A stretch of 64,000 nucleotides of DNA from IMG/VR virus record IMGVR_UViG_3300038463_000730, positions 1-64,000 of that record; one strand, 5' to 3'. Below are positions 5,149 to 59,451 of the stretch, piece by piece. Position 1 is the stretch's first letter. Each line of letters starts with the position of its first letter. The notes beneath the pieces are model-generated. The model did no database searches and had not been told where the DNA came from. It saw only the letters and a list, made by a program, of their open reading frames with translations. The position numbers and the translations under genes were made by a program.

Positions 5149-5979
5149 GTGCCAAGAAGTAACAAAGCTGTAGTTAAAAAGAGCCTCGCCGGAAAACGTT
5201 TTGGAAAGCTAACCGTTGTCGCACCGATATTTCTAACCAAACGTAACCATTACGGATGGGAATGCAAGTGCGATTGCGGCGCTACCGTCTTGGCGTCAGC
5301 CTACGAACTGCGCTGCGGTAGCACAATCAGTTGCGGTTGCGCAAGACGAAAGCCAAAACCACCTCGAAAACCGCGAGTACTCAAAACCGATCCACCAATC
5401 AAACAACCAGATTCCTTTTGGGAAAAAGTTGATAAGACGGATGGATGTTGGCTTTGGGTCGCCGGAAAAGATTCGGGAGGATACGGTATATACCGTAAAC
5501 GTCCAGCTCATCGAGTTTCTTACGTTTTAGCGTATGGCAGCATCCCAGATGGACATATCATCTGTCACACGTGCGATCATCGTGGTTGCGTTAGACCGGA
5601 GCATCTATATGCCGGGACCGATGCTGACAATGCGCGCGACCGAAACATGTGTGGTAAGGGTGCGAGAAACTTCAGCGGTCCAGTAAAGAAAACTACACCG
5701 CTAGAGAAGTTTTGGGCGCGAGTAAATAAGAACCCTGATGGTTGCTGGGAATGGACAGCATCACTAAGTTCCAACGGTTACGGTCGTTTTAGTCCGACCT
5801 CTTGCTACCGTGATCGTGTTTTAGCTCACCGCTTCAGTTACGCACAATTCGTCGGAGCAATTCCAGACGGAATGATAATCTGCCATCACTGTGACAACAG
5901 AAAGTGCGTGCGACCAGATCACTTATTCGTTGGAACGAACGCTGACAATGCAAAAGATCGTATACTCAAAGGGCGATGA
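5149..5979 (+). CDS. HNH homing endonuclease with two HNH domains
   Basis: N-terminal GKRFGKLTV; two copies of FW.KV.K...CW.W...AHR.SY...ICH.CD...CVRP.HL..GT.ADNA.D; antisense to flanking genes. Confidence 0.9.
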   Translation: MPRSNKAVVKKSLAGKRFGKLTVVAPIFLTKRNHYGWECKCDCGATVLASAYELRCGSTISCGCARRKPKPPRKPRVLKTDPPIKQPDSFWEKVDKTDGCWLWVAGKDSGGYGIYRKRPAHRVSYVLAYGSIPDGHIICHTCDHRGCVRPEHLYAGTDADNARDRNMCGKGARNFSGPVKKTTPLEKFWARVNKNPDGCWEWTASLSSNGYGRFSPTSCYRDRVLAHRFSYAQFVGAIPDGMIICHHCDNRKCVRPDHLFVGTNADNAKDRILKGR

Positions 5980-6495
5980 TCAATTTCCCTTCAGCAAGTT
6001 GTGTTGACGAATGAACTTGCACGCAATCATGGCGCTGGTCCGGGCTTCTTCCGTTCCAGTATTGTGATGAAGCGCACGGTCCAGCAGGCTATTAACCTTA
6101 CCCATGGCTGCCGCATCGAATCGATGTGCGGCCGGAGAAGGACAGGCAGGTTGTGACGGGGCCTTCGGGGGCTTGGGCGTAGACTTGGGCTCGGCCTCGG
6201 GCTCGGCCTCGGGCTCGGCCTCGGGCTCGACCTCATGTTCGGGCTTTGCTTTCGGCTTTGGAGCACCGGGAGGGGTTTGGTTTCTTGCATGTGCCTTGGC
6301 TCGTTCACCGGGCGGACGACCACGCAACCGAACAAAGAGTTTCGGGTTACGTTCGGCATATCGATCGACTTCGTCGATTGACGGAAGCTGACGCCCCCAC
6401 CATTCTTTACGAATACGATTGACAGCTCGTTCGTCGGAACGGAAACCAAGTCGTTGCAGACACCACTTAAGGCGAACATTGAGTCCTGACGCCAT
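5980..6495 (-). CDS. protein with EAEP linker and C-terminal DUF2786-like helix pair
   Basis: KVNSLLDRALHHNTGTEEARTSAMIACKFIRQHNL; 12-nt repeat x4 at 6187-6234. Confidence 0.6.
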   Translation of the reverse strand: MASGLNVRLKWCLQRLGFRSDERAVNRIRKEWWGRQLPSIDEVDRYAERNPKLFVRLRGRPPGERAKAHARNQTPPGAPKPKAKPEHEVEPEAEPEAEPEAEPKSTPKPPKAPSQPACPSPAAHRFDAAAMGKVNSLLDRALHHNTGTEEARTSAMIACKFIRQHNLLKGN

Positions 6496-7163: not shown

Positions 7164-7330
7164 GATTATCTCCTTCGCTTAGGCTTCCAGCCAGGCCGGA
7201 GGCCGCTGAAAGATGCCACCTAGCCACGGGCTCGGTTCCCGGCTAACCACTACACCACGGTGCCGTTAGCTGAGCATTCGTGGTAGTGTATTTACCGTTT
7301 TAGGCTAGGTGACATCTTGCAACGAACGTT

Positions 7331-18833: not shown

Positions 18834-20120
18834 TCATCCCTCCGAATGGTTCTGGTTCGACTTGTTCGAACCGTTGATCAGCTTGTCGATGTCTTCGGCC
18901 GAACCTACCAGGCCCTTGCCGAACACCGCCTCCTGCAACATGGAAGCAAGCGACTTACCCTTACCCGAACGAGCGCCGGTCTTGGTGCTCTTCGTGTAGA
19001 CCCCGCTAGCCTTCGCTTCCTCACGAAGGATGTCACGAATCTCGTAAACGATCGGATCCTGGATCGTGAGGCCGAGCGCGGTCATGTTGACCACGTACCG
19101 CTTCGCGTCTTCGTAGGCGAGGAGCTTCTCCGTCGTCACGGCCCCCGGAATGGTACGCCGAGTCCAATCACGCACGTCCACCTTGTCTGCCAGCGGAACG
19201 CCGAGGAGATCCATGAACACCCGTCGAGCCGCTTCGATCATCTGGTACGCATTGATCTGGCAACGACGATACTGAAGCATGTAGCGAGTCGTGCCAGCGT
19301 GGGAGCTGAGTAGCTCGGAGTGAGTCTCGACGATGACCCGAGCGTCGATCCCACCCTTCTCGCGAGTCTGGCAGATCATCTGCCTACGAGCCTTGCGGTA
19401 CTCAGTAAGCAATGCGTTCGTGTCATCGACCTTGGCCTTGGAGTTACGACGCTGGCCGAGAACCGTATCACGATCCCCCGTGTTTGCCACGGCGCCGATG
19501 TTGCCACCGATCATCCTTCGCACATCGACGAAGAACGCTTCGATTGCCTGTTTCTGTTGAACCGTTCCCATGTGGACCGGCTTGACGTTGATCGTTGCGC
19601 TCGGCGTATACGCTTCGGGAACAATACCCTTTGCGTAGTTCAGCTCAGGGCGCGGAGCGATTTCCTTCGCTTGCGCCGCTTCGGCAGCTTTCGCCGCACG
19701 CCGCTCTTTACGTGACTTCGGTTGTTCCTCTTCCTTCAGCTTCGCGTTGACCTCCTTGATCAACCCGATCGCCTTGCGGAAGTTGCGACGCTCTTCCTGG
19801 TTGATCTGGCGATCACCGGGTTGCGCCGGGATCAGCTTGATCCGAACATTCTCACCGATGCGAACCGGCTCCGGCGTGGCCCGACCAGAGATCGGTTTGG
19901 CAGACTTCAGCAAGTCATCCAAGTCCATCCGCACGACCACGGCCAACGCCGTGTAGGCCGCTCTGATCTGATCGTTCGACTTCCCGGTCAAGATGCCGTT
20001 GATATACGGCTGGGCCTTGGGAAGCTGAGCCAACTCGTCCGCGTGTTCCTCAACGAACTTCCTCGCGGGCATGAACGTCGCGGCCTTCTGCAATTCCCTC
20101 AACATATCCGGTTTGAGCAT
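18834..20120 (-). CDS. hypothetical protein (428 aa, basic)
   Basis: Long ORF, GGAG RBS, no recognised domain. Confidence 0.8.
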   Translation of the reverse strand: MLKPDMLRELQKAATFMPARKFVEEHADELAQLPKAQPYINGILTGKSNDQIRAAYTALAVVVRMDLDDLLKSAKPISGRATPEPVRIGENVRIKLIPAQPGDRQINQEERRNFRKAIGLIKEVNAKLKEEEQPKSRKERRAAKAAEAAQAKEIAPRPELNYAKGIVPEAYTPSATINVKPVHMGTVQQKQAIEAFFVDVRRMIGGNIGAVANTGDRDTVLGQRRNSKAKVDDTNALLTEYRKARRQMICQTREKGGIDARVIVETHSELLSSHAGTTRYMLQYRRCQINAYQMIEAARRVFMDLLGVPLADKVDVRDWTRRTIPGAVTTEKLLAYEDAKRYVVNMTALGLTIQDPIVYEIRDILREEAKASGVYTKSTKTGARSGKGKSLASMLQEAVFGKGLVGSAEDIDKLINGSNKSNQNHSEG

Positions 20121-20225
20121 GTGATTGTCTCCCGTTGTGATTGACTACCATCGGTCCCGATCAATGCGGGATGATAGTCGGTTTGATAAGGAGAGTAAGT
20201 GTAACTAAGCTATGTTGCACGTGAA

Positions 20226-20279
20226 ACATTGGGTAGGGACTTATTGACATTGCCATCTTTACCGAACCGACCCCAATGT
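20226..20279 (-). promoter_or_regulatory. structured RNA motif, copy 1 (GGTAA...GTCAATAAGTCCC inside a stem)
   Basis: Stem ACATTGGGGT/ACCCAATGT enclosing a core shared with 21127-21186. Confidence 0.5.
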
Positions 20280-20286
20280 CGAAGCA

Positions 20287-20301
20287 CAATGGAATGGAGC
20301 C
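20287..20301 (-). promoter_or_regulatory. 15-nt motif copy 1 (GGCTCCATTCCATTG on minus strand)
   Basis: Exact repeat, five copies. Confidence 0.7.
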
Positions 20302-20315
20302 GTTACGTTGACCCG

Positions 20316-20651
20316 TTACTCCGCGGCCTTGTCTCCTGTACCGGCCAGGTTCTCCCAATGAGGAGATATATCCTCCGGATCAGCGAACATGGAGAACGCG
20401 CCGCCGTATCCGTACTGCGCATTGAGCGCCTGGCTCACCTCCGTCATCGCGTGCTCTTTCGACACCGTGTCACGCACGCTGAATGGTAGGTAGTCGATCT
20501 GAACCATCTCGATCGATTCCCTAACCATCAGCCGATCGATGTCACGTCGGAGCTTGTTGACTCGCCGCTTCTCCGTTCTGCGCTGGAGCATTCCTCCGCC
20601 GCTAGGTAGTTGGATCATGGCGTGCTTGTGTGCTTGACGGAGCTTGATCAT
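20316..20651 (-). CDS. hypothetical protein
   Basis: 111 aa ORF. Confidence 0.65.
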   Translation of the reverse strand: MIKLRQAHKHAMIQLPSGGGMLQRRTEKRRVNKLRRDIDRLMVRESIEMVQIDYLPFSVRDTVSKEHAMTEVSQALNAQYGYGGAFSMFADPEDISPHWENLAGTGDKAAE

Positions 20652-20654
20652 CGC

Positions 20655-21092
20655 TCAGTGAACCTCCTCAGTCGTTTCGATCTTCGTCTCTTCCTTCTTG
20701 GGCCAGCCGAATGCCACCTCCTCGATGTGAAGCCGGAAGTCCTCGTCCCACGAATGGCGAACGAGCGGCTCGATGTCGCCGAGGATCTTGATCAATCGGG
20801 CCTCCTCCTCATCCCGGAGCACGTGCCAGGCATCCGTCGCCCGACGATACTGCTCGCGCACAACATTGTGCGCCTCCTCTTCCGGTGACTCGGGGCGAGG
20901 GTTGGACTTGTACCACTCCTCGATCATCGCGTTCAGTGCATCACGCTTGCCGATTTCTCGACCGAGCCGCACGTACTCATGATCGCGGAAGTTCTCCGCG
21001 TCACGCTCTTCCTCGAACGCACGAAGCGTCTTCTCGAAACGATCGCAGCAACGACAACCCGAAACGAACGTAACAACGTGAATCGTCTTCAT
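20655..21092 (-). CDS. hypothetical protein
   Basis: 145 aa ORF; GGAG RBS. Confidence 0.7.
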   Translation of the reverse strand: MKTIHVVTFVSGCRCCDRFEKTLRAFEEERDAENFRDHEYVRLGREIGKRDALNAMIEEWYKSNPRPESPEEEAHNVVREQYRRATDAWHVLRDEEEARLIKILGDIEPLVRHSWDEDFRLHIEEVAFGWPKKEETKIETTEEVH

Positions 21093-21126
21093 GGTTGCAC
21101 TCCTGCGGGTTAGAGTAACTCGATAT

Positions 21127-21186
21127 GATTCGCAGGCGGGGACTTATTGACTTGGCCCTCTTACCTATGTATCGACTCTGCGAATC
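21127..21186 (-). promoter_or_regulatory. structured RNA motif, copy 2
   Basis: Stem GATTCGCAG/CTGCGAATC enclosing GGTAA...GTCAATAAGTCCC. Confidence 0.5.
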
Positions 21187-21193
21187 CCATTAG

Positions 21194-21235
21194 AGCGCGC
21201 CGGGGGAATCGAACCCCCGTATACCATAGCGCGCT
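21194..21235 (-). ncRNA. 42-nt tRNA minihelix-like element
   Basis: AGCGCGC-TATGGTATA-CGGGGG-TTCGATT-CCCCCG-GCGCGCT-C. Confidence 0.6.
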
Positions 21236-21246
21236 TGGCCGTATTA

Positions 21247-21696
21247 CTACGCGGCCTTCGTGATCGCTTCGAGACTCTTCTTCGCGTTCGCCACGAACGA
21301 CTTACCCATCGGCGTCTCCAGCACCGATCCGTACACGGCGAGGTAATCCTCGGCGAGCTTGAGGTAGTACCCGCTGAGCGGCGCACCCTCGACCGCATCG
21401 ATCCAACGCACCGGACCCTTGCCGCCGCGCCCCTTGGACTTGAACCCCTCCTTGCCGGTGAGCTTGTCCAGCGCCGAGTTGATTCGCCACGAAGTCACGG
21501 CGAGGAAGGTCTTGGACTTCACCCCGTTCGCATCGGCCTTCTGCGGAACGAGGCCCGACGCCATCATTCCGGCGAGCGCGGTGAACAGGATCTCCGTCGT
21601 CGTGAATACACGCGGTCCCGGCTTCGGAGCCGCAACCTTGGCAGGCGTGGTGTTGGTCTTGATCGAAATCGCAGCGAGAACCTTGTTCGTGTGCAT
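21247..21696 (-). CDS. hypothetical basic protein
   Basis: 149 aa from MHTNKVL; GGAG RBS. Confidence 0.7.
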   Translation of the reverse strand: MHTNKVLAAISIKTNTTPAKVAAPKPGPRVFTTTEILFTALAGMMASGLVPQKADANGVKSKTFLAVTSWRINSALDKLTGKEGFKSKGRGGKGPVRWIDAVEGAPLSGYYLKLAEDYLAVYGSVLETPMGKSFVANAKKSLEAITKAA

Positions 21697-21750
21697 GACT
21701 TGTTTCTCTCCTGGTTTGAGTAACCGTAACTCGCAACTACCGGCCCTCCA

Positions 21751-21765
21751 CAATGGAATGGAGCC
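21751..21765 (-). promoter_or_regulatory. 15-nt motif copy 2
   Basis: Exact CAATGGAATGGAGCC on plus strand. Confidence 0.7.
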
Positions 21766-21847
21766 GCTTGTGACATTGGATCGCACGACTGGATTCGATC
21801 CGTAGGAACATAGTCGCGTTGACTACTTCCGTCGTGCGAAGACTTGC

Positions 21848-22648
21848 TCAGCCACGTGAGAACGTGACACGGGTTTCCGAGACCTTGACTCCGAATCCCA
21901 AGGTAGCCCTCGGATTGTGAGTCTGGTGTGTGATCGGTCCCTTCTTCTCGCGGCTCGTTTGACTTGCCGCCGCCGATGCTGCTTCGACGTAGGTGACATG
22001 GATCACCTTCGGATTACCGCTCGGATAGTTCTGGCAGACGCGGATCGTACCCTCGTCCGTCTCCACGGGTTCCTGCTCTTCGTAACGAACCCGCATACCC
22101 TGATGCTGGCCTCGTTCGGACTTCAGGACCCACCAACGGCAACCCGCACGGTGAGCCTCGAACGCCTTGTCATAGTTCGCCGTACGAGTCTCCTCGCCCG
22201 GAATCTCGACAATGAGCTGAAACGGCTTGAATGCGCCGGAGTGTTTCACGACACGCTTCGCCGTGAAACCGCCGATGAAGTACACACCCCACTTCTCCCA
22301 GAGATCCGTATCGACGTTCTCTTGGAAGATAGCGGACTTCTCGTTCCGCTTCGCCGCCTCATAGGCAACGGCCACGTCCGGGTCTCCGAGCCCGATATCA
22401 CGAGCGAGTTTCCCGCATGAGAACACGGCCTTGTTCCGCGTCTCCAGATCCGTCTCGCACAACGCATTGTGCAGTTTGAACGCCAGGGTCTCCCCTTCGC
22501 TCGCATCCTTCGGAACGCTCACGCGCCCTTCGGGCTTTGCCTTCGCCGGAGCCTTTGCAGGTTTCGGCGCTTCTTTCGCGACGGGCTTACCGATCACCTT
22601 GATCGGGGTGATCGTACCCGTTTCACGGTTTCGCTTGATCACTTGCAT
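21848..22648 (-). CDS. hypothetical protein
   Basis: 266 aa from MQVIKRN; GGAGG RBS. Confidence 0.75.
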   Translation of the reverse strand: MQVIKRNRETGTITPIKVIGKPVAKEAPKPAKAPAKAKPEGRVSVPKDASEGETLAFKLHNALCETDLETRNKAVFSCGKLARDIGLGDPDVAVAYEAAKRNEKSAIFQENVDTDLWEKWGVYFIGGFTAKRVVKHSGAFKPFQLIVEIPGEETRTANYDKAFEAHRAGCRWWVLKSERGQHQGMRVRYEEQEPVETDEGTIRVCQNYPSGNPKVIHVTYVEAASAAASQTSREKKGPITHQTHNPRATLGFGVKVSETRVTFSRG

Positions 22649-22673
22649 TCGCGTCACCTCCGTTGTTGTTTCG

Positions 22674-22688
22674 CAATGGAATGGAGCC
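22674..22688 (-). promoter_or_regulatory. 15-nt motif copy 3
   Basis: Exact repeat. Confidence 0.7.
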
Positions 22689-22689
22689 A

Positions 22690-23955
22690 ATTGCTTAAGT
22701 TGCGAGTTTCCTCACATTCAAACCCACGTATCTAACACGGAGTCGTCATCATCGAACGGTAACTCCCATACTACAGCAATCAAGCGTAGATATGTTGTGT
22801 AGCAGATTCGTAGGCTTGAATGCGAAGGCCAGGGTTCTCACCGTATGGTTTAGCCGATACAGGAAAACCCTGGCTTCGCAAGTTTATGCTTAGAGACCAA
22901 CCTACCAACTAACCCGCTCGGTTCACATACACTTTACCCCATATGACACTGATAGGCGTCCGGCATTGCTCGCCGATGACTCTCTCCTACCTATGGCCGT
23001 GTTGAGATTACCACTAGACCTAGACGCCTGGCATTATCCCGCCAATGGCTTTCTTCTCGGTTTCGTGATCCGATGCACACATTCAAGTGTGACACTGGTA
23101 TCTAGTAACACGATGCAACCCGTAACAGCGAATTAGTAACTCACGTATCACCCGGCACAACCCACTAGGCTTGCGTACCTACTTCCTTTCACACGGCGTT
23201 TTTACACGCCTCACCATGTATGTAGCCTTTCGGCATCACGGCGAGTTTTCATGTTACTCGCTTTCGGCCCCTACACACTTACCCGGTCAACGATTCCAAT
23301 TCACGCTCAACCTACACACCAGGCCAAGGCCAAGTTTTCAGCTAATCATGTTTCGGTTTCTCGCGGGTTAGCATGTAGCTTTGCGCGCCCCTAGCAGATT
23401 GCGAAGACAATACGCTTTCGGTACGGCGCTTCGCATACGAAGAGCTATCTCCTGTCCCTTAGCGATACGGCTTACAAGGCCATACGGTATACCCCAATGT
23501 CAAAGGCGCCCGGTACTAACTCACCGATAGCTTTCTCCTTTGACCTTTCGGTCACTCCGCACCCTCTAACACTGGACTAGTCGCGACCCCTTGGCATCGC
23601 AACCCTATCCCGTAGAGTGAGAGTCATGGTTACTGTCCCTTTCGGAACGCCAACTAGTTAGCTGGCCCGACCTACTCGTTTCGGATATACTATCTCGCCT
23701 ACTCTAGGGAGACAGTCTCTCCGTTTCTTATAGTCGTCCTACTTGCAACGGGTTCCCATTCCCGATGCGTTCAGCATTAGCCCACCTCTCCCGTCAAGGA
23801 GCGAGGTCATATGATGGGCGCCACGTTATGCCCTAGAGGCTAGACTTACTCCGAGGACCCCGTAGGGTAGGCATACCGCCCGGAGGGAACTAGCCACCCT
23901 ACCAGCGAGCGGCTGATAGGTGGGTCGTGGGAGTCGGATTCGGCTCCACCCACTG
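22690..23955 (-). ncRNA. candidate giant structured ncRNA (~1.3 kb)
   Basis: ORF-free; many minus-strand GAAA/GNRA hairpins (23225, 23541, 23410s) and long stem at 22822-22879. Confidence 0.65.
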
Positions 23956-23959
23956 CAAG

Positions 23960-23974
23960 CAATGGAATGGAGCC
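23960..23974 (-). promoter_or_regulatory. 15-nt motif copy 4
   Basis: Exact repeat. Confidence 0.7.
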
Positions 23975-24059
23975 TAGTCATCTCGCGGAACCGAATCGCG
24001 AGACCGCGGCAACCCCGCTTTTCAGCGGGGCGGCATCGCTGCGGCTCAAACCCGGACCA

Positions 24060-24074
24060 CAATGGAATGGAGCC
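24060..24074 (-). promoter_or_regulatory. 15-nt motif copy 5
   Basis: Exact repeat; preceded on minus strand by palindrome GAGCCTACCGATCGGTAGGCTC. Confidence 0.7.
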
Positions 24075-24124
24075 TACCGATCGGTAGGCTCTGATTCTTG
24101 TGAGAGTAGATCGCGCGCCCGCGT

Positions 24125-24351
24125 TGCACGTACCATGCCAGCCCAATTTGACGCGAGACAGCAATGAGACGACGCGCTGCGTTATGGCATGTTTCGAGCT
24201 ATATAATGCATAAAAGATACCTACAATGTCTTTACAATAACATTGTAATTGATCTGGTATGATCTAAGCTATATATTGCACGGAACATACCAATCATACT
24301 CCAGGCCTGGCACGGAACTTGCCTGCCACCCGCCGCTGGCACGAATCTTGC
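24125..24351. promoter_or_regulatory. cluster of sigma54 (-24/-12)-like sites, both strands
   Basis: TGGCACG-N4-TTGC exact at 24308 and 24337 (+); GG-N10-GC variants at 24185 and 24255 (+), 24125 and 24277 (-). Confidence 0.6.
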
Positions 24352-24368
24352 CTGGATAGAGCGACAAA

Positions 24369-24442
24369 CTGGTGAAAACTCTGGCAGATAACCTGGCAGA
24401 TAACCTGGTGAAACTCTGGCGGTAAAACTTGGCGAAACTGGG
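24369..24442. repeat. phased 10-12-nt CTGG repeats
   Basis: CTGGTGAAAACT, CTGGCAGATAAC x2, CTGGTGAAACT, CTGGCGGTAAAA, CTTGGCGAAA, CTGGG. Confidence 0.75.
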
Positions 24443-24693
24443 ATCAACCCAGCTACGACTCCGATATTCCCCGGCATTGCCCAGCGCTACTGAATCAAAA
24501 CCAGATTAAGCACATCGGTTATTTCAATTTCTTTTGGGAAACTAAAGATCTGGACATAATTCTTGGTCTGGAACGGATCTCTAACCTCGTTTCTAGCCAG
24601 AAGCCAAACCGTTTCCAGTACTTAGCCGATAAAAAAGAAATTTTACGTATCTAGCTGGCCGTTCCTGCTCCCGAATCAGCATACCTTTGAGGA

Positions 24694-24936
24694 TTGATGA
24701 GTAAAGCTCAGGACAGGAGAATACGGCAGAAAAGGCTGCGATCGAAGCAGCTGGAAGAAGCTTTGATTCGCGGTGAGATTCGTTTCTATTCCTTCATGAC
24801 TGCGCGAGTTCTCAATACTATCGTCGGAATCGTTATCGGCTTTTTAGTCGTGACATTTCTCATCCTTCTATTCGTAAAAGGAATCGAATTAGAGAAGCTT
24901 CTAGAGTATATCTTTGACATCGATCCGGATGATTGA
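24694..24936 (+). CDS. small membrane protein
   Basis: Basic N-terminus and one TM segment; GAGG RBS. Confidence 0.6.
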   Translation: MMSKAQDRRIRQKRLRSKQLEEALIRGEIRFYSFMTARVLNTIVGIVIGFLVVTFLILLFVKGIELEKLLEYIFDIDPDD

Positions 24937-24966
24937 AACGTAGTTCGAAACGTAGTTCGAAACGTA
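24935..24966. repeat. 12-nt tandem repeat (GAAACGTAGTTC)x2 plus partial
   Basis: Read directly. Confidence 0.8.
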
Positions 24967-25284
24967 TTAGTCTGGTCATTACATTTGTTATCATTTGATA
25001 TTTGGATTCCTTCCTATTCTTTGATCTCCGGGCTTTGTTTTTGGGACGCCAGGAGAGGCAGCCGGAATCTAATCCTGGCTCCAATCCAATCCTCGCGGCA
25101 GGAACGTGGCAAAGAATAATGGTTCGGATCGGCTCTTGATAGGCCAGAACTAGATATTTCAGTCGAGCCAGCTCAATCTCCCGTTTAATAGAGCAAAACC
25201 TGAATCATTCGGGTCGTTCCGGTAGTCGAGTTCCCGGGCCGGTACAACAGGAGGGGAACGTGGAATCACGGGAAAAGATCTGGA

Positions 25285-26202
25285 ATGAAGTCCCTCCTAA
25301 AAGGCATGCCACCCGGAATCGTCGGGAAACCTATATTTGAAAACGGTCAGACTCGTTACAGGACAGCCGGGCCGGAGGGACCGGGATATTGGACCCGCAC
25401 GGAACAAGGCTATATGATCTGGGAAGGTGACCCGGCAAAACCTCAAGGAGAACTAAACCGAGCTAGTTTAGAAGACGCTCATCAGGAATTGATCCGGATG
25501 AAGCAACTACTTGATGAAAATTCTCCGCTTCCTCCTCTCCCGCCCATTCCACCGCTTCCAGTCTTGGATATGGATCCGATCCGGCCCACTCCTTACTTTG
25601 CGGAAGTTCTCCAGGCCAATCAGAATCGACTTAAAGAAGACCAGACGAACATGGAAAGGTTGGCTCGGAGCTATGAAAATTCTAGGCCTGAAATGAAATT
25701 GGAAGAAAACCCAAAACGTTTTTGCGAAACATGTTCGCAAGAATTACCAGTCTTGTTTACCGGTTCGTATCGAGATAATGCCAACCTGAATGCCAATCTG
25801 AATATTCGCGCAGTTAAAGAGTTAAAATCCATGTACCTGAAAAGTCTAGCACGAACCATCGGATTAACATTCCAGAAACGGATCATGATTCTCGGGCCAA
25901 ACGTTTGGTATTTTTTGATTGGGTTGTGGTTGTTGCTTCGTTGGGTATTTGTTCTCACGGTAGGAATTTGGTGCGCTGGAGATCTGGCGAACCAATTCTA
26001 CTTCCATTGGAACGTATCAGTATGGCATGAGGGAAACCTATCCATGCCGTATCTAGCTTGGTTTAGAACTTGGCTTCTTGGTTTGCCGGTTGTTGTTTTG
26101 TTCTTTGCCGGTTGGGGAATTTTCGGAGCCATTCATCATTTCGGGATGATGCATGTAAAATATCGGCACATCCAACTTCCGCCCGGACCGCCTCCCGGAT
26201 GA
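25285..26202 (+). CDS. membrane protein, Pro-rich N-terminal half, CxxC, two to three TM segments
   Basis: 305 aa ORF. Confidence 0.7.
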   Translation: MKSLLKGMPPGIVGKPIFENGQTRYRTAGPEGPGYWTRTEQGYMIWEGDPAKPQGELNRASLEDAHQELIRMKQLLDENSPLPPLPPIPPLPVLDMDPIRPTPYFAEVLQANQNRLKEDQTNMERLARSYENSRPEMKLEENPKRFCETCSQELPVLFTGSYRDNANLNANLNIRAVKELKSMYLKSLARTIGLTFQKRIMILGPNVWYFLIGLWLLLRWVFVLTVGIWCAGDLANQFYFHWNVSVWHEGNLSMPYLAWFRTWLLGLPVVVLFFAGWGIFGAIHHFGMMHVKYRHIQLPPGPPPG

Positions 26203-44194: not shown

Positions 44195-45256
44195 ATGCTC
44201 AGTGCATTCATCTTGAGCAATCGACGTGAAATCATTGCAAATTCGTGTAGAACGATCGCATTGAGATCTGGTTTGATTCCAGACGAAACTCCTGCCGCAG
44301 TGCCGGTATTCCTGAATTTTTTTCTCAGCCAATTGGTCAATATTCTTTCGTATTCGTGTCCTGATGACGGAATGAAACGAACGGCTGCCATCCACGGCGG
44401 CTCGATGCTGGGTCTCGGTTATTCCGTTTCACATGTCGTCCACGACTATGGAGACATTGGTAAGGCTATTATCTGTTTGGCTTTGAAATGTGAAATAGTC
44501 TTCACTGTCCAAGACTTTTACCAGCTATGTCGATGCATCGATTCAGCAGTTTCGGCAGCCGTTACAGAATACGAACGTCTTCGAGACCAGAACGTTGCTC
44601 GGGCCGAGACAGAGCGCATCGGTATATTCGCCCACGAATTACGAAACAAGATGAGTGCCGCAACACTCGCCTACCAATCCATCGTTTCGGGACGCTCACC
44701 TGTTAAAGGCGGAGTCTCGGCAGTCGTTACAAGGAACCTGATCAACGTTAATGATCTGATCGAACGAGAAATCAATCAGGTTCGAGTTGACTCGGGGAAT
44801 TGTCACCAGAAACGAATCCATCTTTACCAGTTTATGGAAGAAGCCGGATCGGATGGAATGGTTTCGGCAAATGCTCGCGGTATCTCGCTTAAGGTAAGCC
44901 CGACTCCACGCGAGATCGACATCGACGTCGATCAACAGATTCTTGCTGGAGCTGTTTCGAATCTATTGCAGAATGCATTCAAATTCACACCTCAAGGCGG
45001 ACAAGTGCTGCTGCGTACGTCTGTCTTGGACCACCGCGTTTTGATCGATGTGGCGGATGAATGCGGCGGTTTGCCAATTGGCAAGAATGAGGAATTGTTT
45101 CGAGCGTTCGAGCAACGCGGAACGAATCGCTCCGGACTCGGGCTCGGATTGTTCATCAGCCGAAAAGGCGTTGAGGCTAATAATGGCTCGATCCATGTTC
45201 AAGACATTCCCGGATCAGGATGCGTTTTCACGATCGATTTGCCATTGGCTTCGTAG
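44195..45256 (+). CDS. orphan cytoplasmic sensor histidine kinase
   Basis: H-box FAHELRN, N-box NLLQNAFKFT, DECGG, F-box LFRAF, GLGLGL, G2 GSG; no TM segments. Confidence 0.9.
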   Translation: MLSAFILSNRREIIANSCRTIALRSGLIPDETPAAVPVFLNFFLSQLVNILSYSCPDDGMKRTAAIHGGSMLGLGYSVSHVVHDYGDIGKAIICLALKCEIVFTVQDFYQLCRCIDSAVSAAVTEYERLRDQNVARAETERIGIFAHELRNKMSAATLAYQSIVSGRSPVKGGVSAVVTRNLINVNDLIEREINQVRVDSGNCHQKRIHLYQFMEEAGSDGMVSANARGISLKVSPTPREIDIDVDQQILAGAVSNLLQNAFKFTPQGGQVLLRTSVLDHRVLIDVADECGGLPIGKNEELFRAFEQRGTNRSGLGLGLFISRKGVEANNGSIHVQDIPGSGCVFTIDLPLAS

Positions 45257-49277: not shown

Positions 49278-49537
49278 TCCATAATGTGTCCGATTAGCTC
49301 GGTCTCTTCAACATCCAATCGAAATACTTCTTTGGCAAATTTGATTGCCAGCTCGTCTTTACCACTACGTACAAGTTCCTCAAGAACTTCGAGGTAGATT
49401 TTCTCGGGAGAGTATCCGATCAATTCCTGTGTATTTCCACCACAAATAGAAAGGATGAATCGATCCGCAGCCTGATTGTTACAAAACGATTTACTTTTGC
49501 CGCTGTAACCTCGGCACTTAACAGTAATGATCTTCAT
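49274..49537 (-). CDS. family C paralogue
   Basis: MKIITV...ELIGHIME-stop. Confidence 0.75.
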   Translation of the reverse strand: MKIITVKCRGYSGKSKSFCNNQAADRFILSICGGNTQELIGYSPEKIYLEVLEELVRSGKDELAIKFAKEVFRLDVEETELIGHIME

Positions 49538-49538
49538 C

Positions 49539-49802
49539 TTATTCCATCACATGTCCAGTAAGATCGGAGGCCATGATATCAACGTTCTTTTTGAAATGCC
49601 GATAAAGCGCTAGTGCAATATCGTATTGCTTTAGCTCAACCAACTTCTTGTAAGCTAGTTCAGCTGCTTGCGGCATGAAGTCGCCATAGCTAGTGAGATG
49701 GTTGTTAATAAACTTGATTGCTCGTTTCTGAGCAAGAAGTTCAGTTGAAAACGACTCAACGTTATGACACGGTTCCCCGAAAACAACTGTCCAGATTTTC
49801 AT
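49539..49802 (-). CDS. family C paralogue
   Basis: MKIWTV...DLTGHVME-stop. Confidence 0.8.
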   Translation of the reverse strand: MKIWTVVFGEPCHNVESFSTELLAQKRAIKFINNHLTSYGDFMPQAAELAYKKLVELKQYDIALALYRHFKKNVDIMASDLTGHVME

Positions 49803-50062
49803 TCGAGTGCATGCCCGGTCAAATCTGATTCGTGGATTGTTCCGACCTCTATCTCAAGGTTGGCCAACCTCAATGCCTCGCGATACTCCTCATGTTGCAT
49901 CAGAATATCAAACGTAGGTTTCAACCGCCCCATACTTGGGGCGCATGTAAGAACATGCTTCAGCGCTTCTTTCTCTGTAGCAAACGAAGTCACTCGCTTT
50001 ATCTTAGCCGAACCACTTGAGTTACTTCTATAGTCCCAAACGATAGCTGTCCAGATTTTCAT
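49799..50062 (-). CDS. family C paralogue
   Basis: MKIWTA...DLTGHALE-stop. Confidence 0.8.
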   Translation of the reverse strand: MKIWTAIVWDYRSNSSGSAKIKRVTSFATEKEALKHVLTCAPSMGRLKPTFDILMQHEEYREALRLANLEIEVGTIHESDLTGHALE

Positions 50063-50328
50063 TCCATCACATGACCGAGTAGGTCATTCTCCTTGATACT
50101 AATTCCTGAGTGTGACTTATACTTCTCATAGAACTCATAAGCCAGTTTGTATTCTTTCTCGCGGACAAGAATGTTTAGCACGAGATTGAACGGATCTTTT
50201 GGATCATACCGATAGGCGCTACGATCATTGATTAGCTCGATCAGCAGCGTTGCTACGTACTGGTAAGCCAGTTGTTCAGTCGCGTACGAGACTATCTTTG
50301 CCCTGTGCTCTATTGTCCATATCTTCAT
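50059..50328 (-). CDS. family C paralogue
   Basis: MKIWTI...DLLGHVME-stop. Confidence 0.8.
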   Translation of the reverse strand: MKIWTIEHRAKIVSYATEQLAYQYVATLLIELINDRSAYRYDPKDPFNLVLNILVREKEYKLAYEFYEKYKSHSGISIKENDLLGHVME

Positions 50329-50591
50329 TCTAGCGGATGTCCTTTCAGGACAGTGGACTCAACACAAATCTGAGCATCCTTATTGGATGAGTTAAACAAA
50401 TCCAACATGAATTTGTACTGTTCCTCGTCCTTTAAGTAATGAAGGAGCCCAAGAAGTCGCCTTGGGACATTATGGCGTCGAATCATAACTAGTTCGGCCG
50501 CTCGCTTCAGCGCAATGGCCTCGGTCGCATAAGCCTCGACTTCAGGAGAATCTTCTTCATGCTGGGAAAACACGACAGACCAAATCATCAT
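50325..50591 (-). CDS. family C paralogue
   Basis: MMIWSV...VLKGHPLE-stop. Confidence 0.8.
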   Translation of the reverse strand: MMIWSVVFSQHEEDSPEVEAYATEAIALKRAAELVMIRRHNVPRRLLGLLHYLKDEEQYKFMLDLFNSSNKDAQICVESTVLKGHPLE

Positions 50592-50602
50592 GAAACGTTG
50601 AT

Positions 50603-57237: not shown

Positions 57238-58047
57238 TTATGGAACGAGCGCTTCGACCCGCGTCGGAACCCATAAGTCGTTGGTCATATCGGCAGCAAT
57301 ATAGGCCGAACTAAACCATGCGTGTCCTGGGTAGTTCGTATCTCCCCATCCCGTTCCCCACGAATTACGAACGAGGAACTGAATGTCCGGGTTACGACGA
57401 ACACCAACGATGCACTGCGCGTGGCCACCGGCCGGATTGGTTGGTGGTTGCCACACATTCGTGCCACCGGTCCAGCTTTCATACTGTTGCGAAACCTGAG
57501 TTCCGAACACGACCGGGTGATTGGCGCGAATCGCCATTTCAACATCGGCAATTCTCTGGTCACCGGTTGAGTCGATTCGGTAGAAGTTCGACAATGGAAC
57601 TTCGTTATCGCTGGCTACTTTGTAAGCCTGTGTTGGTGGTTGGGTAAATACAGCAGCTTCGACATACGGCCACTCCGACTCCGGACAAATACCGAAGCGC
57701 ATTAGAGAGTCAAAAGCATTGTGAATGAATGTGCCCTGGTCTACATTCGTATCATGATCGTATGAACGAGCATTCCAATAAACGAACAAACGTGACAACG
57801 GTGTAATCGTTACGCCTTCGACACCCTGTAGAATCTCCAACGCGCCACATGTTGAGTTGGCAACACACGAGCCGAGCTGACCCTGATCAAAACATGGAAC
57901 CTTTTCAGAGATGATGTACGGGTTGGCTGCTGGAGTCGCGGCCATCCTAGCAAACGCGAGCTTCGTCATGCCGCCGCGCATGACTGAGAATTTGTTGTAA
58001 GGAACCCAGCTTGGTGTTGGTCGGTATCCATTGATATTGTAAGGCAT
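57238..58047 (-). CDS. papain-like C1 family cysteine peptidase
   Basis: DQGQLGSCVAN, GGHA, VRNSWGTGWGD. Confidence 0.9.
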   Translation of the reverse strand: MPYNINGYRPTPSWVPYNKFSVMRGGMTKLAFARMAATPAANPYIISEKVPCFDQGQLGSCVANSTCGALEILQGVEGVTITPLSRLFVYWNARSYDHDTNVDQGTFIHNAFDSLMRFGICPESEWPYVEAAVFTQPPTQAYKVASDNEVPLSNFYRIDSTGDQRIADVEMAIRANHPVVFGTQVSQQYESWTGGTNVWQPPTNPAGGHAQCIVGVRRNPDIQFLVRNSWGTGWGDTNYPGHAWFSSAYIAADMTNDLWVPTRVEALVP

Positions 58048-58368: not shown

Positions 58369-58440
58369 AACAATAAGATGTATGAAAAATGATAGAAGGA
58401 TCAGGTGTCGATATCCTGCTTGTTTTACCCTTCGAACGAT

Positions 58441-59451
58441 ATGCTTCCTCTGATTAAAGAAGGGCTTACGTTCGATGATGTTCTGTTGGTACCGAGGCAT
58501 TCGAAAGTGAAAAGCCGATCGGATATCAAACTGAACGTGAATCTGTCCGGTTTCAGATTCAACACGCCAATCATCCCGGCAAACATGAAGAGTGTTTCGG
58601 GAGAAGCGATGCTCCACACCATGCAAGCTCGTGGAGGAATGGGACTACTTCACCGGTTCATGCCATTCGGCGAACAACTAACGATCATGAGTCAACCGAA
58701 TGTATTGTTCGGTCACGTTGGTGTTTCACTAGGTGTGAATGAAATCGACCTGATTCACCTGGAACAGTTCTATAAGATCGGTGTTCGGATCTTCTGTATC
58801 GACGTTGCTCATGGCGACTCGGATGCTTGTATCGAGATGACTAAGGCGGTCGCGGCCAAAACCGGAACATTGGTCATCTCAGGTAATGTAGCGACAGGAG
58901 ACGGAGCGAGCCGTTTGTGGGCGGCTGGTGCGGATGTTGTAAAGGTTGGGGTCGGACCAGGAAGCCTTTGTACGACCCGGATTGAGACCGGAAACGGTGT
59001 CCCGCAACTTACTGCATTGATGGAAATAGCGGCGGTTCGCGACCACATGAATTACAAAGGTCGTAAATTCATCATCGCGGATGGCGGTATCAAAAACGCT
59101 GGCGATTGTGTCAAGGCTCTCTGTTTCTCAGATATGGTGATGGTCGGTAATCTGCTGGCTGGAACAGACGAGACGCCTGGCGACTTCATCAAACTTACCG
59201 GCGCAAACTACAAACGATATGATGGTAGCTCGACGCACAAAACTAATCGTGTTGAGGGCGTTACAGCCCTTGTTCCATCGAAGGGTCCGGTGGAACATAT
59301 TCTTACCAAATTGGAAGAAGGAATACAGTCAGGATGTTCCTACCAAGGCGCGAGTAATCTAGCCGAGCTGAAACTGTACGTACATATGATTCGCATTACC
59401 AATGCTGGGCTGCAAGAGAGTCATCCTCATGATGTGGCGGTCATCAAATGA
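58441..59451 (+). CDS. IMP dehydrogenase / GMP reductase family protein (no CBS subdomain)
   Basis: [41 protein letters not shown]. Confidence 0.9.

What the first reader, a model, noticed from the sequence alone, without database searches (positions are those of the whole stretch)
22690..23955. Candidate ~1.3-kb giant structured non-coding RNA
Seen: 1.3 kb with no credible ORF in an otherwise tightly packed genome. GNRA-capped hairpins read correctly on the minus strand: TGACC-GAAA-GGTCA (23541-23554), GCC-GAAA-GGC (23225-23234), TAC(C)-GAAA-(GC)GTA (~23411-23423) and a long stem at 22822-22879. The region is bracketed by copies of the 15-nt motif (22674 and 23960) and lies just downstream of sigma54-like sites. 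Established: phages carry large ornate RNAs such as GOLLD and ROOL (about 0.6-0.8 kb). Inference: this is longer than those and shows no group I/II intron, RNase P or tmRNA hallmark I can recognise, so it may be a new class.
Basis: partly seen in the sequence, partly recalled or inferred. Interest (0 to 1): 0.82.

Follow-up and report, generated by a model that had tools for sequence, protein, structure and literature searches.

The report
Large structured non-coding RNA in megaphage
A 1.3-kb stretch of a half-megabase peat phage encodes no protein, folds unusually well on one strand, turns up in peat RNA libraries and matches no known RNA family, so it is probably a new large structured RNA, though with no diverged relatives its structure cannot yet be confirmed by covariation.

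Summary
Window 22689-23959 has no credible ORF, and no frame has gene-like codon usage even with stops ignored. The 15-nt motif brackets the region. Sigma54-type promoters lie just upstream; I found three in tandem. The minus strand folds far better than shuffles (z = -7.9) and the plus strand does not (z = -2.3). Three peat metatranscriptome runs hold pieces of this region and nothing from the flanking genes. No Rfam family matches, at gathering score or at E up to 10. The 19 nt after the upstream motif copy are complementary to the motif, so the two ends of the RNA can pair.

The weak point is covariation. Every other copy found is 100% identical, so it cannot be tested. The two downstream protein families form a conserved gene pair in uncultured phages. 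Several of those relatives carry their own ~1-kb RNA with compensatory changes, but profile and covariance-model searches do not link it to the window RNA.

Verdict: probably a real, previously undescribed large structured RNA at the head of a sigma54-driven operon. Function is unknown. My best guess is a processed stand-alone RNA that works with the operon's proteins. Interest is moderately high.

The parts
24278..24292 (-). Sigma54-type promoter P1, TGGTATGTTCCGTGC (GG-N10-GC), pointing at the RNA
   Evidence: pattern match; 4 of the window's 6 matches cluster here, 1.2 expected by chance. (sequence).
24208..24222 (-). Sigma54-like promoter P2, aGGTATCTTTTATGC (GG-N10-GC), inside a 37-nt repeat unit
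   Evidence: Read from the sequence. The repeat unit is family D3. This site lacks the T before GG, so the pattern did not pick it up.
24126..24140 (-). Sigma54-type promoter P3, TGGCATGGTACGTGC. Inferred transcription start near 24115
   Evidence: The start site is inferred from the usual distance between the -12 element and +1; it was not measured.
24060..24093 (-). Leader hairpin (GAGCCUACC-GAUC-GGUAGGCUC) overlapping motif copy 1 (24060-24074)
   Evidence: helix probability 1.00.
23975..24059 (-). 85-nt spacer between motif copies 1 and 2. It holds two 8-bp hairpins, one capped by GAAA (24012-24031) and one at 23980-24004
   Evidence: RNA-library contigs reach up to 24029 and 24009.
23960..23974 (-). 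Motif copy 2, GGCUCCAUUCCAUUG
   Evidence: Crossed by metatranscriptome contigs 23800-24029 and 23845-24009.
23940..23958 (-). Anti-motif, UUGCAGUGGGUGGAGCCGA. It is complementary to the motif. It can form a local hairpin with copy 2 or a 19-bp end-to-end stem with copy 3
   Evidence: helices 23958-23949/22680-22671 and 23948-23940/22690-22682. (duplex energy -30.7 kcal/mol against -20.7 +/- 2.1 for shuffled bodies; the best site lies exactly at the 5' end).
22689..23959 (-). Body of the candidate structured RNA (1,271 nt)
   Evidence: non-coding; strand-specific folding signal. (RNA contig 23283-23525). (no Rfam family).
22674..22688 (-). Motif copy 3, at the 3' end of the RNA and 25 nt before the start codon of the next gene
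21848..22648 (-). 266-aa protein with a Lys/Pro/Ala-rich N-terminal tail. First protein gene of the operon and member of a family conserved in uncultured phages
   Evidence: No Pfam, PHROG or PADLOC match. Model pLDDT 69.5 with no structural neighbour.
18834..20120 (-). 428-aa protein, second conserved member of the gene pair, preceded by motif copy 5 (20287-20301)
   Evidence: homologues next to the 266-aa family in L006 and L034. (model pLDDT 53, not usable).
21751..21765 (-). Motif copy 4, ahead of the 149-aa gene

Best explanation
The region is the template for a large, highly structured non-coding RNA read from the minus strand.

**Transcription (inferred from sequence).** Three tandem sigma54-type promoters at 24292-24126 start a leftward transcript near 24115.

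**Layout of the transcript (shown by sequence).** It runs through a short hairpin leader, two copies of a 15-nt motif with an 85-nt spacer between them, the 1.27-kb RNA body, and a third motif copy. It then continues into a conserved phage gene pair encoding proteins of 266 aa and 428 aa.

**End pairing (shown by sequence).** The 19 nt that open the body are complementary to the motif, so the 5' end of the body can pair with the motif copy at its 3' end.

**Processing (inferred).** I infer that this end-to-end stem works like the processing stems that flank ribosomal RNA precursors. A double-strand-specific nuclease would release a stable ~1.27-kb RNA from the operon transcript.

**Function (inferred, weakest step).** I infer that the released RNA acts as a folded scaffold together with the operon's proteins. 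One of these proteins has a Lys/Pro/Ala-rich tail of the kind that binds nucleic acids.

The 0.5 confidence applies to this whole chain. That the region is a functional structured RNA of some kind, whether acting in cis or in trans, I put at about 0.7.
For: **Non-coding**
- Stops in all frames.
- No coding-like frame even with stops ignored.
- No protein-family or six-frame match.

**Strand-specific structure**
- Minimum free energy -510.6 kcal/mol on the minus strand (z = -7.9) against -385.6 on the plus strand (z = -2.3).
- Every 400-nt window from 22400 to 24399 has a minus-strand z of -2.6 to -4.5. Most coding windows give 0 to -1.9 on that strand; window 22000-22399 gives -2.5.
- GNRA hairpins number 8 against 3.3 expected, and none on the plus strand.

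**Transcription**
- Contigs from three independent peat RNA libraries lie at 23283-23525, 23800-24029 and 23845-24009 (word depth 17).
- The same runs hold nothing from the flanking genes within 20100-26000.
- The three natural variants seen there fall in predicted loops, or change a C-G pair to U-G.

**Promoters**.

**End pairing**. All non-Watson-Crick positions are G-U on the minus sense only.

**Context**
- The 266-aa and 428-aa families travel together in other phage contigs.
- In those contigs three tandem sigma54-type sites head the module.
- Several lineages carry a ~1-kb ORF-free RNA nearby with compensatory base changes.
Against: - **No covariation.** Every other copy is 100% identical over up to 11.5 kb. 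A single-sequence fold is not proof of a conserved structure.
- **Biased run choice.** The RNA-library runs were chosen because they contain this sequence. Their contigs cover only about 470 nt of the roughly 1,450-nt predicted transcript (24115-22674), some of it upstream of the body.
- **Contigs cross copy 2.** Either the precursor is abundant or no cut is made there.
- **Ambiguous anti-motif.** It can pair equally well with the adjacent motif copy as a plain local hairpin.
- **No terminator.** None separates the RNA from the next gene, which fits a leader as well as a separate RNA.
- **No link to the relatives' RNA.** It is not detectably related to the window RNA and sits at a different place in the module.
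- **Unknown proteins.** The proteins have no recognisable fold or family, so the RNA-protein partnership is inference only.
- **Weak analogy in L006.** The analogous end pairing there is not above chance.
Confidence: 0.5

Rival explanations
1. It is a very long structured 5' leader acting in cis. The 1.4 kb between the sigma54 promoters and the 266-aa gene stays attached to the mRNA and controls its stability, translation or read-through. It does not work as a separate RNA.
For: No intrinsic terminator lies between the RNA and the gene. Motif copy 3 ends 25 nt before the start codon, and its CUCC could pair with the GGAGG ribosome-binding site. The RNA is the first element after the promoters.
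Against: A 1.3-kb leader would be several times longer than typical bacterial leaders (my general knowledge; not checked here). The same motif also precedes genes that have no such leader. In relatives the large RNA sits after the module's genes, not in front of them. The body can close on itself through the end-to-end stem.
Confidence: 0.2
2. It is not one giant RNA but a string of smaller RNAs or processing products, for example a ~170-230-nt 5' species and other fragments, cut from one precursor.
For: The RNA-library contigs are short and separate. The best covered one (165 nt, depth 17) spans 23845-24009, across motif copy 2 and not within the body proper. The fold contains self-contained domains, such as 22696-22886 and 23838-23895.
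Against: Short contigs are what low coverage gives in any case. The fold nests the 5' half onto 22895-23019 through several helices with probability 0.8-0.99. The full-length z-score exceeds that of any 400-nt piece.
Confidence: 0.15
3. It is non-functional spacer DNA: a remnant of a lost gene or mobile element that happens to fold well because of its composition, and is transcribed only by read-through.
For: No homologue has been found anywhere. No covariation is available. Chance alone gives about three 9-bp complementary pairs in 1.27 kb (my own calculation).
Against: The z-score of -7.9 was computed against dinucleotide-preserving shuffles, so composition is controlled for, and the signal is specific to one strand. 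The GNRA hairpin excess is also strand-specific. There is no trace of a coding frame or protein similarity. The anti-motif and motif complementarity sits exactly at the two ends. The region has its own promoters.
Confidence: 0.1
4. It is a DNA-level element tied to replication or packaging, since it lies beside the point where gene orientation, GC content and cumulative GC skew all switch (about 24.2-24.6 kb).
For: The strand switch, the GC drop from 0.56 to 0.46 and the cumulative skew minimum near 24.5 kb. Short tandem repeats lie in 24376-24429 and 24935-24958.
Against: Those features lie to the right of the RNA, not inside it. The RNA body has no iterons or AT-rich tract. The strand asymmetry of folding and the G-U-only mismatches argue for selection at the RNA level.
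Confidence: 0.05

Closest known systems
GOLLD (Rfam RF01998) and ROOL (RF03087), large ornate RNAs often carried by phages
   Same: Phage-borne, several hundred nucleotides or more, no coding capacity, many hairpins, function unknown. Cryo-EM shows that these RNAs are scaffolds forming RNA-only assemblies (PMC12286853).
   Different: No match to either covariance model, even at E up to 10. The window RNA is about 1.6 to 2 times longer. There are no tRNA genes nearby. It is driven by sigma54-type promoters and embedded at the head of a protein-coding operon.
The unnamed ~1-kb RNA found here next to the same gene pair in relatives (L034:8660-9560, L041:4120-5000, L044:1872-2794)
   Same: It is associated with the same two protein families and with tandem sigma54-type promoters. 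It is of similar size, ORF-free, on the same strand as the genes, and has no Rfam match.
   Different: Neither a profile search nor a covariance model of its best-conserved domain finds anything in the window RNA. It lies after the genes and after a small ...ADAFLAKHG... protein that the window lacks. Unlike the window RNA, it has comparative support.
Processing stems of ribosomal RNA precursors
   Same: Sequences at the two ends of a long structured RNA pair with each other, forming a duplex long enough (19 bp) for a double-strand-specific nuclease. That rRNA stems work this way is established knowledge.
   Different: No cleavage has been shown here. The 3' arm is a repeated motif that also occurs ahead of protein genes. 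There is no rRNA similarity.
Oriented short intergenic repeats of mycobacteriophages (stoperators; start-associated sequences)
   Same: The 15-nt motif is asymmetric, always in the direction of transcription, and sits in front of genes. This resemblance is recalled from memory and is a lead only.
   Different: There are only five copies, confined to one 4-kb operon. The motif is transcribed and has a complementary partner at the start of the RNA.

Membership tests
GOLLD / ROOL / HEARO / OLE / raiA (known large bacterial and phage RNAs in Rfam 15) | Match to the family's covariance model | tested here: not met
   No match at gathering score in the whole window. Only three chance-level matches to unrelated families at E up to 10 in 22500-24300.
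GOLLD / ROOL | Frequent neighbourhood of tRNA genes in phage genomes | tested here: not met
   ARAGORN finds no tRNA or tmRNA in the 64-kb window.
Group I / group II introns, RNase P, tmRNA, rRNA | Match to the Rfam models. For group II, also domain V and usually an intron-encoded protein | tested here: not met
   No such match at E up to 10. No ORF with any Pfam match inside the region.
Relatives' ~1-kb RNA (L034 / L041 / L044 type) | Sequence similarity to the family profile | tested here: not met
   nhmmer with the family profile, filters off, finds nothing in 22.6-24.2 kb.
Relatives' ~1-kb RNA (L034 / L041 / L044 type) | Presence of the conserved 98-nt domain ending in AAGGCGGAAACGC (sequence and structure) | tested here: not met
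   Model R1 with filters off scores 71-115 bits in the known members. The best window hits score 11.6 bits or less and lie elsewhere.
Relatives' ~1-kb RNA (L034 / L041 / L044 type) | Collinear short-word similarity | tested here: inconclusive
   Collinear against reversed-order chains: 32 vs 25 (L034, k=6) and 19 vs 15 (L044, k=7). True homologues give 32 vs 20 and 62 vs 25.
Relatives' ~1-kb RNA (L034 / L041 / L044 type) | Association with the 266-aa-like and 428-aa-like gene pair and tandem sigma54-type promoters | tested here: met
Structured non-coding RNA (generic criteria) | No coding capacity | tested here: met
Structured non-coding RNA (generic criteria) | Folding energy beyond shuffled controls, on one strand | tested here: met
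   z = -7.9 on the minus strand, -2.3 on the plus strand. Window-by-window values.
Structured non-coding RNA (generic criteria) | Transcribed as a discrete RNA | tested here: inconclusive
   Pieces occur in three RNA libraries and the flanking genes are absent. However, the runs were selected by this sequence, contigs carry no strand information, and no full-length species is shown.
Structured non-coding RNA (generic criteria) | Compensatory base changes among homologues | not testable with these tools
   The only other copies are 100% identical. No diverged homologue turned up in the phage, IMG/VR, metagenome or genome scans.

The most novel reading that the evidence does not exclude
This would be the founding member of a new class of giant (~1.3 kb) phage RNAs. 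It would be made from sigma54-dependent promoters, cut out of its operon through a stem formed with a repeated 15-nt motif, and assembled with two phage proteins of unknown fold into a ribonucleoprotein particle. The unrelated-looking ~1-kb RNAs beside the same gene pair in other phages would be its fast-evolving counterparts. The conserved thing would then be a protein-RNA machine whose RNA part has diverged beyond the reach of sequence searches.
Probability: 0.25. Interest if true: 0.85.

Novelty: new variant of a known kind. Interest (0 to 1): 0.62.

Why it matters
- **Few large RNAs are known.** Bacteria and phages have only a handful of large non-ribosomal structured RNAs, and the function of almost all of them is unknown. 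If this candidate is confirmed as one RNA, it would be longer than GOLLD and ROOL.
- **This one comes with handles for experiments.** It has defined promoters, a repeated motif with a complementary partner at the RNA's start, and two conserved partner genes.
- **It points to a second family.** That ~1-kb RNA family has comparative support and lies in related phages.
- **Sigma54-type promoters in a phage are unusual.** I know of few phage operons with tandem sigma54-type promoters, and a brief literature search surfaced none. Such promoters imply dependence on a host or phage enhancer-binding activator.

Tried and rejected
- **Stop-codon recoding.** Rejected: all three stops occur in every frame, and no frame has gene-like codon usage even with stops skipped.
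- **Decayed gene.** Rejected as far as it could be tested.
- **Known RNA families.** None match.
- **Similar DNA in GenBank phages.** None found.
- **Close relatives through the flanking proteins.**
  - IMG/VR holds only the source contig.
  - The metagenome scan found nothing.
  - The 5.8-billion-protein search gave only identical copies plus relatives at 51% identity or less, on short contigs.
  - The divergent 305-aa neighbour has no homologue at all.
- **The motif as a general phage promoter.** Rejected: there are five copies in 434 kb, all in this operon.
- **The motif as a sigma54 site.** Rejected: the GG-to-GC spacing is 12, not 10.
- **Scans for more members of the relatives' RNA family.** Short or gapped patterns returned only chance matches.
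- **Structure prediction of the two proteins.**
  - The 428-aa model is too poor to use (pLDDT 53).
  - The 266-aa model (pLDDT 69.5) has no significant neighbour in PDB or BFVD.
  - The Atlas look-ups gave nothing.
- **A shared 13-mer with L006.** Not collinear with the other shared word, so it is probably chance.
- **End pairing in L006.** Not above shuffles.
- **The L043 upstream gap.** It is AT-rich and does not look like an equivalent of the window RNA.
- **The ORF-free stretch 49398-50602.** No folding signal.

Full report
**Where the window comes from.** The window is the first 64 kb of IMG/VR contig IMGVR_UViG_3300038463_000730. That contig is 434,688 bp and was cut from a 502,994-bp JGI contig of a peat metagenome. 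The gene content fits a very large phage. Most ORFs are small and unknown, and among them are HNH endonucleases, a GMP-reductase-like gene, a histidine-kinase-like gene and a papain-like protease. No similar DNA or protein exists in 50,697 GenBank phage records.

**The observation.**
- Window 22689-23959 has no ORF over 85 codons, and all three stop codons occur in every frame.
- A codon-usage log-odds score trained on the window's own genes puts all six frames in the out-of-frame range even when stops are skipped, so a recoded gene is excluded.
- The small internal ORFs match no Pfam or PHROG family at E up to 1.
- Six-frame translations match nothing in the relatives' loci or in the rest of the window.
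- The 15-nt motif occurs at 22674 and 23960 as stated, and also at 24060, 21751 and 20287, always in the same orientation.
- These five are the only copies in the entire 434-kb contig.

**Evidence for a structured RNA on the minus strand.**
- The 1,270-nt minus-strand sequence folds to -510.6 kcal/mol, against -436 +/- 9 for 40 dinucleotide-preserving shuffles (z = -7.9). The plus strand gives -385.6 (z = -2.3).
- In 400-nt windows, every window from 22400 to 24399 has a minus-strand z of -2.6 to -4.5. Most coding windows to the left and all windows to the right give 0 to -1.9 on that strand; window 22000-22399 gives -2.5.
- The transcribed strand is G-rich (GC skew of the plus strand about -0.2), and many predicted pairs are G-U, which exist only on that strand.
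- GNRA-capped hairpins are enriched on the minus strand (8 against 3.3 +/- 1.8; 7 of 500 shuffles reach 8) and absent on the plus strand.

**Transcription.**
- The index of public runs finds the sequence in many peat DNA runs and in three peat metatranscriptome runs.
- Laid on 20100-26000, the three RNA runs give contigs at 23283-23525, 23800-24029 and 23845-24009 (word depth 17).
- They give nothing on the flanking genes apart from a 34-nt spurious match from another organism. A DNA run covers the whole stretch evenly.
- A depth of 17 on 165 nt with zero on the neighbouring 5 kb is hard to explain by DNA carry-over.
- Caveats: the runs were selected by this very sequence, contigs carry no strand information, and only about 470 nt of the predicted transcript are covered.
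- Two contigs cross motif copy 2, so the motif lies inside an RNA.
- The three natural variants seen in these contigs fall in predicted loops (23321, 23492) or turn a C-G pair into U-G (23909). That fits the structure, but three variants are too few to weigh much.

**Promoters.**
- Four of the window's six matches to TGGYAY-N6-TGC lie within 24126-24351, against 1.2 expected per 64 kb.
- Two of them are on the minus strand and point at the RNA (24292-24278 and 24140-24126). Two are on the plus strand and point the other way.
- A third minus-strand site with correct GG-N10-GC spacing lies at 24222-24208, inside a 37-nt repeat.
- The RNA therefore sits directly behind three tandem sigma54-type promoters 70 and 82 nt apart. 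The last one predicts a transcription start near 24115. That start is an inference.

**Anatomy of the transcript.** In order, the transcript contains:
1. a leader hairpin overlapping motif copy 1
2. an 85-nt spacer with two 8-bp hairpins
3. motif copy 2
4. the body
5. motif copy 3
6. a ribosome-binding site and the 266-aa gene

No terminator-like site separates the RNA from that gene.

**End pairing.** The first 19 nt of the body (23958-23940) are complementary to the motif. In the full-length fold they pair with copy 3 at the far end, forming 19 bp with one bulge. The duplex energy is -30.7 kcal/mol, against -20.7 +/- 2.1 for the motif region paired with shuffled bodies, and the best site lies exactly at the 5' end. 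All non-Watson-Crick positions are G-U on the minus sense. The same 19 nt could instead form a local hairpin with the adjacent copy 2, and sequence alone cannot tell which forms.

**The motif.** Its GG-to-GC spacing of 12 nt does not fit a sigma54 site. Each copy is preceded by a different hairpin, and nothing else around the copies is conserved. What the motif is remains open.

**Relatives.**
- *Identical copies.* The 266-aa protein downstream has identical copies in two independent Logan assemblies, and the DNA there is 100% identical over 7.8-11.5 kb. This gives no variation to use.
- *Distant family members.* A profile search finds eleven more distant family members at 30-53% identity.
- *The gene pair.* Their contigs show that this family travels with homologues of the window's 428-aa protein, at 29% identity (E = 2e-34) in L006 and 23% (E = 3e-10) in L034.
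- *Shared promoter layout.* In L034, L036, L041 and L047, three tandem TGGCACG-N4-TTG sites about 100 nt apart head the pair, the same promoter arrangement as in the window.
- *The closest relative with upstream DNA.* L006 (37% identity) has a 500-nt ORF-free stretch before the gene (z = -4.9). It is bracketed by its own 19-nt repeat at places analogous to the window's motif copies. It has no detectable similarity to the window RNA.

**A second RNA family in the relatives.**
- L034/L035/L037/L038, L041, L044 and L045 each carry a ~1-kb ORF-free stretch just after a small conserved protein.
- These stretches are homologous to one another, with profile E-values from 4e-26 down to 1e-240 and beyond (first seen; alignments).
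- In a 433-column core, 20 of 86 predicted pairs keep pairing through changes on both sides.
- In one 98-nt domain, 92.5% of cells are paired and four pairs have double changes, a level reached by 4 of 500 shuffles and by none of the slid controls.
- One member has a GAAA-capped hairpin inserted in a loop.
- No Rfam family matches it.

**Is the window RNA a member of that family?**
- The family profile, with filters off, finds nothing in the region.
- A covariance model of the conserved domain scores 71-115 bits in known members and at most 11.6 bits in the window, at other places.
- A collinear short-word test gives a small excess that is not convincing.
- Membership is therefore not met.

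What is shared is the company the two RNAs keep: the same gene pair and the same promoter type.

**The proteins.** Neither protein matches Pfam, PHROGs or PADLOC. The 428-aa model is unusable (pLDDT 53). The 266-aa model (pLDDT 69.5) has no significant neighbour in PDB or BFVD, and the Atlas look-ups gave nothing. The only functional hint is the Lys/Pro/Ala-rich N-terminal tail of the 266-aa family, a feature common in nucleic-acid-binding proteins.

**Interpretation.**
- The most likely reading is a large structured RNA, transcribed from sigma54-type promoters as the first element of an operon.
- It is possibly released through the end-to-end stem, and possibly works with the operon's proteins.
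- The transcript layout and the strand-specific folding signal are shown by sequence. Processing and partnership are inferred.
- The main rival is a giant cis-acting leader.
- Less likely rivals are a string of smaller RNAs, inert spacer DNA, and a DNA-level element tied to the nearby switch in strand and composition.

**Novelty.** The RNA belongs to the known kind 'large ornate non-coding RNA carried by phages' but to none of its described families, and it is longer than GOLLD or ROOL. Literature searches found no description of such an RNA or of this module. I call it a new variant of a known kind. Confidence is limited by the lack of covariation.

Noticed in passing
L034:8660-9560; L041:4120-5000; L044:1872-2794; partial copies in L045:2807-3089 and L037:3911-4213: A ~1-kb ORF-free, mutually alignable RNA-like region lies beside the same gene pair in other uncultured phages. 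It has compensatory base changes and no Rfam match, and looks like an undescribed large RNA family in its own right.
   Followed up: partly
L034:5468-5740; L036:4401-4647; L047:286-535; L041:1325-1712: Three tandem repeat units about 100 nt apart head the module in relatives. Each begins with a near-consensus sigma54 promoter (TGGCACG-N4-TTG) followed by ...TTTTCCATCCCGAG.... The window has the same triple arrangement at 24292-24126.
   Followed up: partly
L036:5013-5073, 6192-6252, 7184-7244; L007:about 900-970: A 61-nt repeat follows each of three module genes. It looks like the T-arm plus the acceptor 3' strand of a tRNA (CCTAGGTTCGACTCCTAGG...GTGCGCC). ARAGORN was run on L007 and called no tRNA there; it was not run on L036. 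These may be tRNA-like processing signals.
   Followed up: no
window 24126-24351 and 24185-24291: A divergent promoter region. Two plus-strand sigma54-type sites (24308-24322, 24337-24351) face away from the RNA. Two 37-nt units each carry a -24-like TGGYAT at both ends, on opposite strands.
   Followed up: partly
window about 24200-24600: GC content drops from about 0.56 (left arm, minus-strand genes) to about 0.46 (right arm, plus-strand genes). Cumulative GC skew reaches its minimum near 24.5 kb. This may be a replication origin or a junction of two genome modules.
   Followed up: no
window 24376-24429 and 24935-24958: Short tandem repeats: CTGGCAGATAACCT-like three times, and GAAACGTAGTTC twice. 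They lie in the ORF-poor, AT-richer stretch upstream of the promoters and may be activator-binding sites.
   Followed up: no
window 24232-24477 (minus strand): The 81-aa gene called here by the source annotation overlaps promoter P1 and has an odd, repetitive, low-complexity sequence. It is probably not a real gene.
   Followed up: partly
window 49398-50602: Another 1.2-kb stretch without ORFs of 90 aa or more. It has no folding signal on either strand (z between -0.7 and -1.9) and no Rfam match.
   Followed up: partly
L006:6-40, 68-102, 600-634: The closest relative with upstream DNA has its own repeat (GCTTTATTCATCTTCGGTC). Two copies lie 62 nt apart, and a third lies just before the 266-aa-like gene. 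This mirrors the layout of the window's motif although the sequence is unrelated.
   Followed up: partly
window 5149-5979; 44195-45256; 57238-58047; 58405-59451: Recognisable genes elsewhere in the window: a double HNH endonuclease, a histidine-kinase-type ATPase, a papain-family protease and a GMP-reductase/IMPDH-family enzyme.
   Followed up: no
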